Positions 56,189 to 63,443 of a stretch of DNA of 64,000 nucleotides are shown here, in pieces. Made by a program: the position numbers and the translations under genes. Source of the DNA: Vitrella brassicaformis CCMP3155. Its lineage: Eukaryota; Protista; Chromerida. Below the pieces are notes generated by a model. It had not been told where the DNA came from, did no database searches, and saw only the letters and a list, made by a program, of their open reading frames with translations. The stretch covers positions 173,591 through 237,590 of the forward strand of contig CDMY01000947.1 of the NCBI GenBank assembly GCA_001179505.1, in the 5' to 3' direction. Numbering within the stretch: position 1 is the first letter of the stretch; every line of letters begins with the position of its first letter.

Positions 56189-59100
56189 TCACCCCATGTA
56201 CCGTTTGCATGATCGACGTGGCCGTGTGGTCACAGTGCTCGACGCATCTCCCCCACGGATGCAGGGCGCCGGATGGCTGCGGCTGCGGCGGGCTGGTCGT
56301 GGTGCCTGTCGTAGGCTGATCAGCGGTGGGCGGCTTCGGCTTGGCCGCCTGCTGCTTGTCTTCTGTTTGTGTGTGGGGGTGTGGCTGGATGTTGTCCTTT
56401 GTCGGTGGGGTTGGCGGGGGAGGAGAGGAGGGCTGGGAGTGTGCATCTCTATGTAGCCGACAGCCTGCAGCACAGACAGACAGGGAAGGGCAGGCAGAGA
56501 GATCAGATATGGAAAACTGCGTGGCCTGCTGTACGTACCTTGTAGAACTCGTCTTCGCTCAGGGAGCCATCTCTTGCGGTGTCCATGCTTCCGAACAGCC
56601 GCCTAGGAATGTTACAGATGCGACAAGGAGAGTAGGGCAAAGCCCCACGCGTCGATCGTGTCTCCTCCCCACTTGGCGTCCCCCTCTGAGAGGCCCAACT
56701 TGCCCGTCGCCCCAGCGACAAACTCGCCCACGCCCAGAAGACCATCCTGTAACAAAGCAGTGAGCGAAAGTCCGCATATGGGGTCCATCCGTCATTTCAG
56801 GCAGAAGGCGTCAGTCACCATGTTTGTGTCCATCGCAGCGAACGCGTCTTTGGGGTTGTCCATGTGCAGGTACAGACGTCGCTTGAGCTCTCTCTCGTCA
56901 ACCCCCAGAGCATTTGAGAACTCTGTGCGGTCGATCTGCTCATCACCGCTCTGTTGCGCAGCACAACATGTGGAGCAATTGGGATTAATGTGTGTGTGTG
57001 TGTGTGCTTGGTCTGACCTTGTCGAGCGCTTTGAAGATGCCGGGTAGTGAGCTTGTGGGCAGCCCTATGGATGCGACGAAGCGTCCAAATTCCTCGATGG
57101 ACAGATGGTCATCTTTGTTCTTGTCGAACTGCATTTGACACACGAAATCGCGGCTGTGTATCTCCCTCCGTCTCGTGTCTGTGTGTTCTTACTTTTGTGA
57201 AGGCTTCATTCCAGTCTTTGTAGGCCTTGTTGACCTTCTTGAGCAGATCACCCAGCGTGGCTGAAAACACAGCGGGGCAAGTCATTCCTTCCGGCCTTCC
57301 CCTCGTGTCTCTATGTGTGTGTCTCACCGCCCAAGGACTCCATGTACTCCATCTCATCTACTTTGCCGTCACGATTGACGTCAAGCCCGGCAAACAACTC
57401 CCTGCAGGAGGCGGAAAAAGGCGCAAAGCATCTGTTCGTGACAAGTTGGCGCCCGTTGCCGACTCACTTTGCATTGGCCTCCGATGAGACGCCCACTTCT
57501 TCTACGTGCTTGATGAACTCACTCTCGTCGAGGGCGCCGTCGCCATTCTGAAAAGGGCACATGAGAGGGCCAGGGGCATCGGGTCGCCTCGATTGTGTAC
57601 CTTATCTGCCTTGTGGAAGGCGTCCAGTGCATTGTCGAAGGCGTCGTGCACACGAATGCGGAGGCCCTCGAGGTCAACTGCATCTCATACACACACAGAG
57701 CTTGTGCATACAATGTGGGATGGCAGGGGATAGATATTTCCTGTTAGTTTCCAGTGCCTGCCCACCTCCAAGCGCATTTGTGTATTCGTCTCTGCTGGCT
57801 TTGCCGTCCCCATTGGCGTCCACCTGTTTGAGCAGCTCGACCGCCTTTTCCGTCCCAATCGACAGATGCTGGGTGCCTGCACACAGACATGAGAGGGACA
57901 AATGGATGTGCCTCCCTTCCCCTGTCTGTCTGTATGCGTGTCTGTCTGCTGGATCTCCCTACCGGCCTTACACTCGTCGGCGGTCAGGTGGGTGTCTTTG
58001 TCCTGGTCCCACAAGTCGAAGGCAGCCTTGAGCGACTGGAAGGCTCTGACGATGCGGGCGCGCAACTCATCCAATGTTACTGTACGCAGAGCAGAGCAGG
58101 CAGGCATTCTCGGCTGGCTGTCTGAACTTATTTCTTGCGATACCTTGTGTACCATCTTCGTCGCGGTGTTGACTGCCCGAGAATCCCATCGCCCGGTAGA
58201 ACTCCTCGCGAGACACAAACCTGATCGACGACATCGCTGATGGACGAGTGTGGCGTTCGGCGTGCTGTGTGTGTTGGCTGTTGCATACCCCTTCTTGGAT
58301 GTGTCAATGTCCTTGAAGAGCTTGGCTGCGTCCTGGTCGTTCACTCCGAGCTGCCTCATGCCTGCAGCCATCCACGGGTCGACACACACGTATTCAAGTG
58401 GCCGGCCATGTGGTATCTTACCGGCTGTCCATTCGTCAGGTGAGATTTTGTCGTCCTTGTCTGCGTCAAAGGTTGCGAAGGCTGCCTCGGGATTCTGCAG
58501 ACGCTTGTACACTCGATGTCTCAGCTCCTGCACGTCGACTGAGACCAAGGAGGGTTGCTGTATCAGTCCAGTGTCTCACCTGTTGAGTTCGTCTTCTCCT
58601 CAGTTGCCACGTCGTCAGGATCGCTCGCAACCCCCGACTTGGCGAATGCGGGCTCGGGCGAGGACTTGCCGTCGCAGAAGTCGACACCGACCGCCCCAGC
58701 CTCTCCACCAAAACTGCCGGATGCAATGGCTGCTTCCGCCTTTGATTTGAAGTCCTTGCACGCAGGACTCAGTACAGTCTCGGATGGCTGCAAGAGGGAA
58801 AAACAGGTAAAAGCAGCACCACAGATTTTGTCTGCAGCGATGGCATACCATTCCTCTGTCCTTGAAGATGGCCCCGAGCTCATTCTGGCAGGCGAACTCG
58901 AGGTTGTTCAGAAAGCCAGCATCCTTCACGTCTGCCTTTCCCCCCGCCTCTTTTGCCTCCATCAGAGCGAAATTGATGCTGGCCAGGCAGGACGCTCTCA
59001 GCAGCCGACCCGGGATGTAGTCGATCAGTTCAGTCTTGGTCAGATACGAGTCGTTGACCGTCAGAGCACCGCAGAACGCCACTCCAGTGGGCAGACCGCC

Positions 59101-59493
59101 TCCAGCTGGCAGCAGGCGATCCTCTGCCAGGCCGCCCGGCTTGTCGAAAGCTTCAAACGCAATCGTTTTGAACCGCGCGCAATCATCAAGCGCCTCCACA
59201 GGATTCTCCATGCCTTGCTCGCCGAGGAACTTTAGACAAGTCGACTGCACCGTGGTCAAGGAGTCAGGCGAGAATTGTGTGCCGGGCATCTTGGTCTGGT
59301 CGTGGGCTGAGATAATGGCAAAGCATGTCTGCACACAACAACCACAAACACAGGGCACTGCGACACAGCACGTGTGCATCCATGCATCACTCACGTCGAA
59401 GAAGCTCTTGTCCTCGATTGCATTGAAGAGTGGGGCTGCTGCTGACGTCGAGAAGGCGCCCACTGCAAGGATCCACCAAAGAGGCGGCCACAT
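56189..59493 (-). CDS. Secreted protein with Cys-rich N-terminal region and ten EF-hands in five tandem modules
   Basis: Signal peptide MWPPLWWILAVGAFSTSAA. Spliced EF loops: DADKDDKISPDE, DTSKKGFVSREE, DQDKDTHLTADE, DANGDGKASRDE, DKNGDGALDESE, DVNRDGKVDEME, DKNKDDHLSIEE, DKSGDEQIDRTE, DTNMDGLLGVGE, DTARDGSLSEDE. The 3' end below ~56470 is uncertain. Confidence 0.85.
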
Positions 59494-59552
59494 CGGGAAC
59501 GCCAAACTCGCGTGTTTACCTTTGGCATGATTTGTAAACAGACGCGTTGGAG
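59494..59552. promoter_or_regulatory. 59-bp bidirectional spacer with dyad symmetry (TGTTTAC...GTAAACA flanked by CGCG and CCAA/TTGG)
   Basis: TGTTTAC at 59513-59519 and GTAAACA at 59534-59540. Each gene sees GTAAACA..CGCG..TTGG just upstream of its own ATG. Function is inferred. Confidence 0.55.
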
Positions 59553-62500
59553 ATGATCTTTCTTTTCGCGGCTCTCGCTGCAGCGTCATCGGCTGCAGCG
59601 CTGCGTGAGCGCACCGTCAGCGGCGACGACCATCCAGTGGGCAATGTCATCACACTCATACAGAACGTATGCGAATGTGGGAAGCACAGATCTGTAATGC
59701 CACCGAATACCGGTGCTGCAATGTGCGTTGTGTGCAGCTGAAGAAGTCATCTGTGAAGGCCCGAGAGAGCACAGAGCTGACATGGAAGGAAACAGCACCC
59801 TCATGCCAACGCAGCATCGTGGAAGGCAAGAGGGACATTACAACGTACAGGTATGTGGATAAGGATCAGATCGCCCTCGACAGCGGTGATCTGCATCTGT
59901 CGTCTCTTTTCCAGGGACAAGAAAGCTCGGTTGGCCGCCCTGGTCCAGGAGCTGACCACATCTATCGATGTGCTGGCTGCCGATATCGATGAGCTCGTCA
60001 AGGTGCGAGACGAGAAACAGGCCGCCAAGGACAACGCGACGGCCGTCCGAACAGAGGAGAACGCACAATTCAATGCCAACAGTGCCGGTAGGTAACCTGG
60101 CGCACCCAAGTGCTGAATCCATGACATGCATCTACCTATGCTGTCCATGCACAGACTTCAATGCGACGCTGGCGGCCCTCGATATGGCAATCGCGACCAT
60201 TGAAGCCTCCAAGGCGGATGCTAGTCTCGTTCAGAACCTGAGAGCCCCCAACCTTCCTGGCAACAAGATCCGCTCCCTCATCGCACAGCTCCGCAGCCAT
60301 GTGGACGAGCCGCCAGCTGCGGCAGTNNNNNNNNNNNNNNNNNNNNNNNNNNNNNNNNNNNNNNNNNNNNNNNNNNNNNNNNNNNNNNNNNNNNNNNNNN
60401 NNNNNNNNNNNNNNNNNNNNNNNNNNNNNNNNNNNNNNNNNNNNNNNNNNNNNNNNNNNNNNNNNNNNNNNNNNNNNNNNNNNNNNNNNNNNNNNNNNNN
60501 NNNNNNNNNNNNNNNNNNNNNNNNNNNNNNNNNNNNNNNNNNNNNNNNNNNNNNNNNNNNNNNNNNNNNNNNNNNNNNNNNNNNNNNNNNNNNNNNNNNN
60601 NNNNNNNNNNNNNNNNNNNNNNNNNNCCCCCCCCCCCCCCCCATCCCCCAGGCCAAGGCATACGACTTCAAGTCGGGGTCGGTCATCGAGGTGCTCCAGA
60701 CGCTGAGGGACAAATTCCTGGAGGATATGCGCACCGCTGAGATTGCCGAGATGAACGCGCAGCAGACGTACGCAATCACCGCACAAGACCTGCAGAACTT
60801 CATTGATGACACTCAGGTATGGCCATAGCTGTCGGCCGGGAAGTGGGGATGCAGTGAATGTCTGTCGATTTGTTGCAGGCGACGATTGACGCGAAGGGTG
60901 GCGAGAGGGACGAGAAAATACAGGCACTGACCACAGCCAACACAGATCTCGCGTCCGTCAAGACACTCCTGGAAGAGGGTATGTGCCTGCACACACGCTC
61001 CAATGAATGGCCAAGCAAATCAGCGCACCAATTTGCGTGCAGCCGAGAATCTTCTCAAGACGACAGAGGACACGTGTGCGCAGCAGAAGACGGAGCACGA
61101 GCAGAAGCTGCAGCTCATTGATGAGGGGCTTGAGACGATGGACAAGGCAATCGAGATACTCATGAAGGTGGGCGGCGGCATTTCCCCCATGCCCCCTCTG
61201 TGCCCTCTCATCTGACCAGCCTGTCTATCTGTTTGTGCAGGTGGCAGGGCACCGCTACAAAGAGGCCAACAAGGCACGTATGGCCGAGAGGGGACTCGTA
61301 GGGGGAGGAGAGTCGTTCATACAGGCGGCAAAGGCAATACGACACGACTGACATACACAGCACCCCGACGCACACTCCAATCCATCCGTGTTTTTGTTTT
61401 TGCAGGTCGTCACGTGTGTGGATCCGTCTGACACGATGCAGGCCGCGCTGAGGAAGGCATCCACCTTCCTCAGGAGCAGCGGCAAATTCAGATCCACCGA
61501 ATACACCGATGTGCGTGAGACACACGAACCTGTCTCGCTGACGGATGATATGTCTCTGTCTTTGTTCTGACCATCCCTTTCAGATGCTGAAGAGCCTCCA
61601 GACGATCGCCGATAAGCCAGAGGGCGTCTGCCGATACTGTGACAAGAGTGCGCGGGCCGTAGAACAACACGAGGGCCATCGCGCAGGAATGAGATCGGGT
61701 CGTTCCCTCTGCGCACGTGTGCGTCTCAGGTCCGTTCAAGACCATCAAGGAGCAAATTCAAAAACTCATCTTCAAGCTCAAGGCCGACCAGACGGCTGAA
61801 GATCAACACAAGGCACGTAGTCTCCAACACACACAACATGAATAATTAAGATTAAGTGGATGATACCTGCTCACGCGTCTCTTCCTGTCTATTCGTGTCT
61901 GTGTGTCAGAACTGGTGCGACCGCGAGATGCAGGAGAACACCATGCGCAACGAGTCCAAGACTGCCAAGCACATGGAACTCACCATGAAGCTGACGCAGC
62001 ACCAAGCCGACGTGACGGTGAGTGCCCTGACATGCATACACACGCACATGTTCACGCATTCGCCCACCGCTGTGTGTGTTTGTTTCTGGTGATCAGTCGC
62101 TGACGGCCGACATGAGTGAGTTGGAGCGGCAGATCGCCGAGCTGACCAGCCAGATGGCCGAGGAGACCAGCCTGCGGCAGGAAAACAAGGCAGAAAACGA
62201 AGCATCCATCAAAGGTCCATCCATCCATCCATCCATCCATGACACACACGGATTGCAATCATCTTGCGCCCTTTCTCCCCCATGTGACAAATGTGTTGTA
62301 GATGCTGAGGAGGCGCAGGGAGCGGTGCAGCAAGCCTTGCAGGTCATCCGAAGCTACAACACCAAAGTGACCGCATTCAACGCACAGCCGTCGCCCGACA
62401 CGTCCTCACCGGTGCTGCTCGACCTGGCGGTGCCTGACGCGGGAGAAGTGCTCAAGTGAGAAGATACCTAATTCCATCTTTCTCCCCCTCTTCTCACGTG

Positions 62501-63443
62501 TCATGTCTCCCGCTGTGCAGTCTCTTGATGAACATTCTGACGGAATACAGCGAGATGGAGGCCGACACGCGGGCTGCCGAACAACAGGACTCCCGATCGT
62601 ACAAAACGGTCAGCCAGCAAAAAATGTATTCGTCCTTTGCTGCGCTGCATTCCCATCCGTATGTCGTCAGTATATGGACGAGGCCTCCAGCCAGAAAGCG
62701 ACCATGGAGAGCGACGTCAAGCAGAAGAGCAACAAGGTGGATGAGCTCAAGGCGTCCATCGAAGCACTCCAGGTGGGTGGGTATACACGGGGGACACACC
62801 GACAGACACCCAGCAAAGCCCCTCTCTGCATACATCCATCAGAAAAGGACGAAACAGCTGGGCAAGGAGCTGCACGCGGTTCAGAAGTACCTTGCAGACC
62901 TCGACCATCCATGTGGTGAGCAAACAAGCGCAAAGAAGATAATGGCTGCATCATGAGATCGTGGTGGTGTATGCGATTGCTGAGTCATCAGGTGAGGGTG
63001 AGTCAACTTACGAGGACCGCAAGAAGGCCCGCTCGGACGAAATCGCCGCCCTCGGCTCAGCGCTCACCACGCTCAAGGAGGCATTCGATAGTGTAAGAAA
63101 CAACACAACCACATCCACAACGTGTCTCACCTCCTTGTGCGTGTCTTACCGTCAGATGGAGGTGGCCAAGGCCCAGACCCCGGTGTACACACCTCCCCCT
63201 CCTGCACAGCAGCCCGCAGCACTCGCCAGCCATGCAAACAACCACACCCTCTCGTCCCAGCCAGCCACCCAGCGACAGAACTCCACACAAGCATCGATCA
63301 CGGCTGGCGTGACCAACAACAAGGCTGATGACGGGCCCCTCTTGCCGGTGGCGAGCCTCGCGGCGCCTGAAACATCAGAGAAGAAAGCCTTGTCCTTCCT
63401 GAGGAGCAAGAGAACGGTGCATGCACACGCGGCCGTTGGATAG
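59553..63443 (+). CDS. Secreted, internally duplicated long coiled-coil protein (alveolate family; architecture resembles trichocyst/mucocyst matrix precursors)
   Basis: Signal peptide MIFLFAALAAASSAAA. Two homologous halves: HPVGNVITLIQNL / PFKTIKEQIQKL...NWCDREM; KSGSVIEVLQTL...EMNAQQTY / LLMNILTEYSEMEADTRAAEQQDSRSY; TCAQQK...LETMDKAIEIL / PCG...YEDRKKARSDEIAALGSALTTL. About 19 exons, with an assembly gap inside one exon. Confidence 0.8.
60327..60626. other. Assembly gap (N run) inside an exon, followed by poly-C
   Basis: 300 N between codons for PPAAA and PPPPPIPQ. Confidence 0.99.

What the first reader, a model, noticed from the sequence alone, without database searches (positions are those of the whole stretch)
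56470..63443. Candidate Ca2+-responsive extrusome module: EF-hand protein and matrix-like protein sharing a 59-bp dyad-symmetric spacer
Seen in sequence: two signal-peptide genes whose ATGs are 59 bp apart (59493 -, 59553 +). The spacer is an imperfect inverted repeat, CCAAACTCGCGTGTTTAC-(14 nt)-GTAAACAGACGCGTTGG, so both genes have GTAAACA..CGCG..TTGG within ~26 nt of the ATG. Established: ciliate trichocyst/mucocyst matrix proteins are signal-peptide, internally duplicated coiled-coil precursors whose lattice expands in response to Ca2+. Inference: the symmetric element co-regulates a lattice protein and a luminal 10-EF-hand Ca2+ sensor or buffer for the same secretory organelle. I know of no description of such a linked pair.
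Basis: partly seen in the sequence, partly recalled or inferred. Interest (0 to 1): 0.75.

Follow-up and report, generated by a model that had tools for sequence, protein, structure and literature searches.

The report
Trichocyst-matrix-like gene beside secreted EF-hand gene
In the alga Vitrella brassicaformis, a gene related to trichocyst-matrix proteins and a gene for a secreted ten-EF-hand calcium-binding protein start 59 bases apart on opposite strands; the spacer holds two copies of a short DNA word also found before three of the four other genes of the same matrix-like family, but nothing yet shows that the two proteins work together.

Summary
The two start codons lie at 59493 (-) and 59553 (+), 59 bp apart, and the spacer carries an imperfect dyad. 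About 2% of shuffled or random 59-mers score as well.

The assembly gap lies inside a poly-C intron, and the exons on either side join in frame.

The plus gene is a diverged, two-unit member of Pfam 38.1 PF27870 ("Trichocyst matrix protein T1-F domain"). That family occurs in ciliates, dinoflagellates and diatoms, and Vitrella has five copies.

The minus gene (CEM37666.1) encodes a signal peptide, a cysteine-bearing N-domain and five EF-hand pairs. The deposited model omits two EF-hand exons. Dinoflagellate mRNAs encode the same layout.

New here: the core GTAAAC/GTTTAC lies within 50 nt of the ATG in four of the five T1-F paralogues, yet it is rare in the DNA at hand (11 per 119 kb, six of them in those promoters). 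The dyad is therefore probably a real promoter element of this family.

The "extrusome module" is not shown:
- Head-to-head spacing under 100 bp is normal in Vitrella.
- No other paralogue has an EF-hand neighbour.
- No RNA data were reachable.
- I found no report of extrusomes in Vitrella.

The verdict is partly supported. An untested first-reader note on another piece of this genome also flagged a trichocyst-matrix-like protein.

The parts
59494..59552 (.). 59-bp spacer between the two start codons; presumed compact bidirectional promoter and/or the two very short 5'UTRs
59505..59519 (.). left arm of the imperfect inverted repeat; holds CGCG and TGTTTAC (GTAAAC core at 59514-59519 on the minus strand)
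59534..59548 (.). right arm of the inverted repeat; holds GTAAACA (core 59534-59539) and ACGCGT
59553..63443 (+). T1-F-family (trichocyst-matrix-like) gene, 19 exons, about 750 codons, stop TAG at 63441-63443; two GC-AG introns (61274-61405 and 61813-61909)
   Evidence: exon model; family profile hits; colinear with paralogue
59553..59666 (+). exon 1 of the plus gene: hydrophobic signal-peptide-like start followed by the family's conserved N-terminal motif
60325..60651 (+). intron 4 of the plus gene; contains the assembly gap 60327-60626, bordered by poly-C tracts
60652..60816 (+). exon 5, the best-conserved T1-F segment (family profile E=7.8e-15; 41% identical to the C759 paralogue)
56539..59493 (-). 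secreted multi-EF-hand gene (CEM37666.1 / A0A0G4H2A3), 16 exons in my model; a further exon may start at 56464; the deposited model instead reads through to a stop near 56612
58580..59328 (-). exons 2-3: cysteine-bearing, predicted all-helical N-domain; pairwise homologous to the N-domain of dinoflagellate P0123 (E=1e-10), otherwise without detectable relatives
58422..58538 (-). EF-hand exon left out of the deposited model (it needs a 41-nt intron); same end phase and motif as exon 58079-57963
56539..56602 (-). EF-hand exon left out of the deposited model (tenth EF-hand); exon phase parallels 57401-57328

Best explanation
Two secretory-pathway genes of Vitrella brassicaformis CCMP3155 sit head to head on one very compact bidirectional promoter. 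The plus gene is a diverged fifth paralogue of the T1-F ('trichocyst matrix protein T1-F domain') family. It has a signal peptide and then two homologous units, each a long antiparallel helical hairpin with conserved cysteines. The minus gene encodes a signal peptide, a cysteine-bearing helical N-domain and five EF-hand pairs, a layout shared with dinoflagellate proteins. The dyad in the spacer is two inverted copies of a GTAAAC-core element that characterises the promoter-proximal 50 nt of T1-F genes in this genome. It is most likely the binding site of a dimeric transcription factor that is still unknown. By position it could drive both genes. Shown here: the anatomy, the family memberships, the recurrence of the motif, and the placing of the gap in an intron. 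Inferred: that the motif binds a factor and acts in both directions. Not shown: that the two proteins meet in one organelle.
For: Organism and gene identity. Spacer and dyad. T1-F membership: relatives of the C759 paralogue carry PF27870, Atlas clusters are named 'Trichocyst matrix protein T1-F domain-containing protein', and a profile of those relatives hits window exons at E=7.8e-15 and 4e-4, colinearly. Fold: helices 27-153 and 202-311, pLDDT 81, with only generic coiled-coil matches. Duplication. EF-hand gene. Dinoflagellate homologues with the same layout; their mRNA carries the end of the dinoflagellate spliced leader (the leader sequence is from my own knowledge). Motif: GTAAAC/GTTTAC lies within 50 nt of the ATG in the window gene and in the C938, C356 and C256 paralogues. 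Only 0.4-0.9% of 59-nt windows in 119 kb of Vitrella DNA hold it. Six of its 11 occurrences lie in these promoters. P(at least 3 of 4) is 7e-4 even under a conservative null that shuffles the same sequences. Compact head-to-head genes are typical of Vitrella (PMC4501334).
Against: No transcript data, so start sites, 5'UTR introns and co-expression are unknown. The core was shortened from 7 to 6 bases after seeing the data. In an unbiased test, some 6-mer is shared by 4 of 5 shuffled promoters in 6% of trials. The C759 paralogue, the most conserved one, lacks the motif. The strict half-site is rarer genome-wide than its reversed control (29 against 135). No Forkhead or CG-1 DNA-binding domain was found in the genome, so the factor is unidentified. 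The window gene's membership rests on exon-level matches because the joined model was not searched.
Confidence: 0.6

Rival explanations
1. The first reader's module: the EF-hand protein is a luminal Ca2+ sensor or buffer packed with the T1-F lattice protein in one extrusome-like secretory organelle, and the dyad co-regulates both.
For: Both products have signal-peptide-like starts. The plus gene is in the trichocyst-matrix-named family. The shared spacer holds the T1-F promoter motif. Both protein families also occur in dinoflagellates, which do have trichocysts. Ca2+ triggers trichocyst matrix expansion (10.1101/2024.08.22.609204). An EF-hand protein, calmodulin, was once reported in extruded trichocysts, though this is disputed (PMC9608856).
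Against: None of the four other T1-F loci has an EF-hand ORF within several kb. Spacers under 100 bp and head-to-head pairs are the norm in Vitrella, with modest co-expression. The family occurs in diatoms, which lack trichocysts. I found no report of extrusomes in Vitrella. There are no expression or localisation data.
Confidence: 0.18
2. Neighbours by accident of a compact genome: the GTAAAC element serves only the T1-F gene, or is a 5'UTR/RNA element. The EF-hand protein is a general Ca2+ buffer of the ER/Golgi or of the cell surface, unrelated to T1-F function.
For: The median intergenic distance is 92 bp, and head-to-head clustering is said to stabilise rather than co-regulate transcription. 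The EF-hand part matches SPARC-type and general secreted EF-hand models. The dyad itself reaches only p of about 0.02. The EF-hand gene is single-copy while T1-F has five copies.
Against: The dyad is symmetric, so both genes see a GTAAACA..CGCG half-site within 26 nt of the ATG. The deposited product does not end in an HDEL/KDEL-type retention signal, although the true 3' end is unresolved.
Confidence: 0.22

Closest known systems
Pfam 38.1 PF27870, 'Trichocyst matrix protein T1-F domain' family (name as given by Atlas cluster labels)
   Same: Signal peptide, two homologous long-helix units, conserved cysteines, and the conserved aromatic-x-F-x-S-G-G-type motif that opens the second helix. The profile match and colinearity run over the whole gene.
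   Different: The window gene is the most diverged of five Vitrella copies (32-48% identity per exon to the C759 copy). It has a Pro/Gln/Thr-rich tail and 18 introns. The Pfam model itself could not be run here.
Paramecium trichocyst matrix proteins (TMP T1/T2/T4) and Tetrahymena granule-lattice (Grl) proteins
   Same: Secreted, acidic, heptad-rich precursors. The predicted unit of two long helices split by a flexible linker recalls a precursor cut into two 15-20 kDa polypeptides (size and pI data in 10.1101/607622).
   Different: The ciliate precursors described are about 370 aa, whereas this protein is about 750 aa with two units. No direct alignment to a biochemically validated TMP was possible. 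Processing, crystallinity and Ca2+-driven expansion are untested.
CREC family (reticulocalbin, calumenin, Cab45): luminal multi-EF-hand proteins of the secretory pathway (from my own knowledge)
   Same: Signal peptide followed by several EF-hand pairs, with a predicted luminal or secreted location.
   Different: Ten EF-hands rather than six or seven, an extra cysteine-bearing N-domain of about 230 aa, and no HDEL-type end in the deposited model. The nearest relatives are dinoflagellate 16-EF-hand proteins, not CREC members.
Bidirectional (head-to-head) promoters of chromerid genomes (Woo et al. 2015, PMC4501334)
   Same: Head-to-head genes with a spacer below the genome's 92-bp median intergenic distance.
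   Different: Here the spacer carries a dyad whose core recurs at paralogous promoters, which the paper does not describe.
Forkhead-type site GTAAACA and MluI/CGCG-box motifs (from my own knowledge)
   Same: The half-sites contain the exact forkhead core heptamer and a CGCG/ACGCGT box.
   Different: No Forkhead or CG-1 domain was found in the Vitrella genome. The resemblance is in sequence only, and the binding factor is unknown.

Membership tests
PF27870 T1-F (trichocyst matrix protein T1-F domain) | Significant match to the family profile | tested here: met
   Tested by proxy. A profile (A2) built from relatives that carry precomputed PF27870 hits scores window exon 60652-60816 at E=7.8e-15 and exon 61045-61167 at E=4e-4, in order. 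The Pfam model itself is not in the local library.
PF27870 T1-F | Full-length two-unit architecture behind a signal peptide | tested here: met
   Window exons match P0127 colinearly from residue 198 to about 608. Exon 1 has a hydrophobic start plus the family's N-terminal motif. The two halves of P0127 align at E=1e-9.
Ciliate trichocyst/mucocyst matrix proteins (functional class) | Proteolytic processing, crystalline packing and Ca2+-triggered expansion inside an extrusome | not testable with these tools
   Needs biochemistry and electron microscopy. I found no report of extrusomes in Vitrella; PMC4501334 ascribes the chromerosome to Chromera.
EF-hand superfamily | Pfam EF-hand matches above the curated cut-off | tested here: met
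   P0121: EF-hand_1 at 112.7 bits, EF-hand_7 at 115.7 bits. The two extra exons match EF-hand models below cut-off, as expected for pieces of 38 and 21 aa.
CREC family | C-terminal HDEL/KDEL-type ER retention signal | tested here: inconclusive
   The deposited C-terminus is not HDEL-like, but the real 3' end is unresolved, so the test is not decisive.
Co-regulated bidirectional gene pair | Head-to-head orientation with a short shared spacer | tested here: met
   59 bp.
Co-regulated bidirectional gene pair | Correlated expression and start sites inside the spacer | not testable with these tools
   No RNA run holds the locus.
Conserved functional gene pair (T1-F + EF-hand) | Linkage repeated at paralogous or orthologous loci | tested here: not met
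   There are no EF-hand ORFs in the 10-14 kb around the C759, C938, C356 and C256 paralogues. Orthologous loci in other species could not be reached.
Forkhead-regulated promoter | A Forkhead-domain factor encoded in the genome | tested here: not met
   PF00250 has no match in G000, but the controls did not ring either, so absence is not proven.

The most novel reading that the evidence does not exclude
A luminal multi-EF-hand protein (signal peptide, Cys N-domain, 10-16 EF-hands), shared by chromerids and dinoflagellates, is the Ca2+ trigger or buffer partner of T1-F matrix proteins. Both would be switched on through a GTAAAC dyad. That would make this an ancestral alveolate extrusome cargo module surviving in a chromerid for which I found no report of trichocysts.
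Probability: 0.13. Interest if true: 0.75.

Novelty: new member of a known kind. Interest (0 to 1): 0.42.

Why it matters
Chromerids are the free-living sisters of apicomplexan parasites. Five genes of a trichocyst-matrix-named family in Vitrella, with a shared promoter word, give a concrete handle on which secretory cargo the alveolate ancestor had and how it was switched on. The motif can be tested directly by binding assays with the alga's DNA-binding proteins. The EF-hand neighbour, with dinoflagellate homologues, is a candidate luminal calcium protein. If it proved to be packed with the matrix protein, it would bear on the old, unsettled question of how Ca2+ is sensed inside extrusomes. 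As it stands, the linkage alone is ordinary for this genome.

Tried and rejected
Exons were searched one by one by reference, and the deposited proteins P0121 and P0127 stood in for full-length products.
3. Exon-wise scans against the local Pfam library gave nothing for the plus gene, because PF27870 is newer than that library.
4. The PDB sequence profile search and Foldseek against the PDB gave only generic coiled coils.
5. AlphaFold on the EF-hand protein's N-domain without an alignment failed (pLDDT 43), so no fold search was run on it.
6. The word search and the 1.84-billion-protein search with the N-domain exon found only the Vitrella protein itself. A pairwise comparison later showed real but weak homology to dinoflagellate P0123, so I dropped the label 'orphan'.
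7. Sequencing-run search: only DNA contigs hold the locus, and the one possible RNA run does not.
8. Genomic context of a Prorocentrum relative gave no DNA.
9. I looked for a regulon at the 29 genome-wide half-sites and 5 dyads. There was no consistent link to signal-peptide genes.
10. The supplements of Woo et al. 2015 hold no per-gene Vitrella expression table.
11. The paper on Oxyrrhis trichocyst protein candidates (Rhiel et al. 2018) is not held.
12. Gavelis et al. 2017 reported no homology between dinoflagellate and ciliate extrusome proteins; the Pfam family now spans both groups.
Full report
ORGANISM AND LOCUS. The window is G000:C947:173591-237590 of a 72.7-Mb, 1064-contig assembly. 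The minus-gene product is identical over its shared part to CEM37666.1 / A0A0G4H2A3, "EF-hand domain-containing protein" of Vitrella brassicaformis CCMP3155, on a 237,590-bp contig. GC content is about 58%. Introns are short (41-132 nt) and mostly GT-AG.

OBSERVATION. The two start codons lie at 59493 (-) and 59553 (+), so the spacer 59494-59552 is 59 bp. Its arms, 59505-59519 and 59534-59548, are 80% complementary without gaps. With two small indels both arms read GTAAACA..CGCG..TTGG outwards. The pattern GTAAACA-N0-3-CGCG occurs only here in the window. As an inverted repeat it is only mildly unusual: about 2-5% of dinucleotide shuffles and of random genomic 59-mers score as well. Both N-termini have uncharged hydrophobic cores.

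THE GAP. Logan contigs of three DNA runs end at 60326 and run on into at least 25 C. They resume at 60627 behind another C-run. Exon 4 of the plus gene ends in phase 0 at 60324, directly before a GT. Exon 5 begins in phase 0 at 60652, after a C-rich tract ending in CAG. The paralogue on contig C759 has one uninterrupted 180-codon exon across this point, and both window exons align to it with only a few residues of length difference. The gap is therefore a homopolymer-C problem inside an intron, and the flanks belong to one gene and join in frame. The C759 paralogue has a similar poly-C-flanked gap in one of its own introns.

GENE MODELS. A script chose GT/GC-AG junctions that keep the frame between stop-free segments.
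- The plus gene has 19 exons and about 750 codons. Two of its introns have AAG|GCACGT donors.
- The minus gene has at least 16 exons.
- The deposited 613-aa model (P0121) skips exon 58538-58422 and reads through the donor at 56673 to a stop near 56612.
- Both omitted exons are open and match EF-hand Pfam models.
- They have the same intron phases as their internal paralogues (58079-57963 and 57401-57328).
- They align to the first and last EF-hand region of the dinoflagellate homologue P0123.
- The 3' end remains open: a further exon from 56464, or the deposited read-through.

THE PLUS GENE. Exon 5 hits a second locus in the genome. That paralogue's large exon retrieved 784 proteins, 52-61% identical among those listed. 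Most come from marine eukaryote catalogues, one is from Prorocentrum cordatum, and many carry precomputed PF27870. The local Pfam copy lacks that family. Atlas clusters nearest to the full-length paralogue P0127 (CEM32657.1, 713 aa) are named "Trichocyst matrix protein T1-F domain-containing protein". PF27870 is present in 90-98% of their members, and the recorded taxa are ciliates and diatoms. A profile of these relatives scores window exon 5 at E=7.8e-15 and exon 7 at 4e-4. P0127 matches window exons colinearly through both halves. One family unit folds as two helices of 127 and 110 residues joined by a flexible linker (pLDDT 81). Structure searches give only the family's own cluster and generic antiparallel coiled coils. 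The two halves of P0127 are homologous (E=1e-9). Vitrella has five full-length copies: the window gene and those on C759, C938, C356 and C256. However, the family is not confined to organisms with trichocysts.

THE MINUS GENE. It encodes a signal peptide, a predicted all-helical N-domain of about 230 aa with repeated cysteine spacing, and then 76-residue EF-hand-pair modules. The N-domain exon has no hit other than itself among 1.84 billion representatives, nor in the word search. The EF-hand region does find proteins of about 1050 aa with 16 EF-hand-like loops. Their N-domains align to the Vitrella one pairwise (28% identity over 137 aa, E=1e-10). One is encoded on an intron-free 3.6-kb contig that begins with TTGGCTCAAG. 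That is the end of the dinoflagellate spliced leader, according to my own knowledge. The architecture is therefore shared with dinoflagellates.

THE MOTIF. The strict half-site is rare in the genome (29 hits against 135 for the reversed control). The dyad TGTTTAC-N4-34-GTAAACA occurs five times. The sites show no common kind of neighbour. The promoters of the T1-F paralogues tell a different story:
- C938 has TGTTTAC at -45.
- C356 has CGCG at -38 and GTAAAC at about -23.
- C256 has CGCG at -36 followed by the perfect palindrome GTAAACGTTTAC ending at -18.
- C759 has only a one-off variant.

The hexamer is rare. There are three in the 64-kb window, two of them in the spacer. There are 11 in 119 kb of Vitrella DNA, six of them in the 295 nt upstream of the five ATGs. 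It is 7e-4 under a conservative null that shuffles the same sequences.

There are two caveats. I shortened the core from seven to six bases after looking. And a blind search over all hexamers reaches the same degree of sharing in 6% of shuffles. I conclude that GTAAAC is probably a real promoter-proximal element of this gene family. No Forkhead or CG-1 domain was detected, so the factor is unknown. ApiAP2 proteins are the obvious candidates, from my own knowledge.

THE "MODULE".
- For it: both products enter the secretory pathway, they share a spacer that holds the family's element, both families also occur in dinoflagellates, and Ca2+ triggers trichocyst expansion.
- Against it, or untested: Vitrella's median intergenic distance is 92 bp. 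Head-to-head pairs are over-represented there, and their co-expression is described as modest (PMC4501334).
- No EF-hand ORF lies near any other T1-F copy.
- No RNA data could be laid on the locus.
- The same paper ascribes the chromerosome to Chromera, and I found no report of extrusomes in Vitrella.
- The one historical precedent for an EF-hand protein in trichocysts, calmodulin, is itself disputed (PMC9608856).

VERDICT. The anatomy is real, and the gene identities are now firm. The dyad probably matters for transcription of T1-F genes. A functional partnership of the two proteins remains an untested idea with modest prior probability. An earlier first-reader note on another piece of this genome (s1-227143) also flagged a trichocyst-matrix-like protein; it had not been followed up.

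Noticed in passing
window 58422-58538 and 56539-56602 (minus strand): The deposited model CEM37666.1 omits two exons that each encode an EF-hand. One omission stems from a 41-nt intron, the other from reading through a donor site.
   Followed up: yes
window 61274-61405 and 61813-61909: Two introns of the plus gene appear to use GC-AG splice sites with the same donor context, AAG|GCACGT. No GT donor keeps the frame at 61813.
   Followed up: partly
window 63390-63420; window 61455-61475; C-termini of P0122-P0124: A short hydrophobic-F-L-x-(x)-R motif closes each unit of the window T1-F protein. It also ends the dinoflagellate multi-EF-hand homologues. It may be a shared sorting or processing signal, or it may be chance.
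   Followed up: no
L004:6240-6540 (C759) and window 60327-60626: Both T1-F genes carry an assembly gap flanked by long C-runs inside an intron. Homopolymer-C introns seem to break this assembly repeatedly.
   Followed up: partly
L041 / G000:C947:444-466: At the start of the same contig, a dyad TGTTTAC-N9-GTAAACA lies 14 nt upstream of an ORF of at least 160 codons with a hydrophobic start. Its product has no recognised features.
   Followed up: partly
L044:1-10 and L045:1-20: Metatranscriptome contigs of the EF-hand homologue and of a T1-F relative begin with the end of a dinoflagellate-type spliced leader (TTGGCTCAAG, and a variant TTTTAGCTCAAG). This places both families in dinoflagellates.
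   Followed up: partly
window 62215-62245 and many other introns in the loci: Tracts of TCCA repeats recur in introns across this genome; in one frame they read as His-Pro-Ser-Ile repeats.
   Followed up: no
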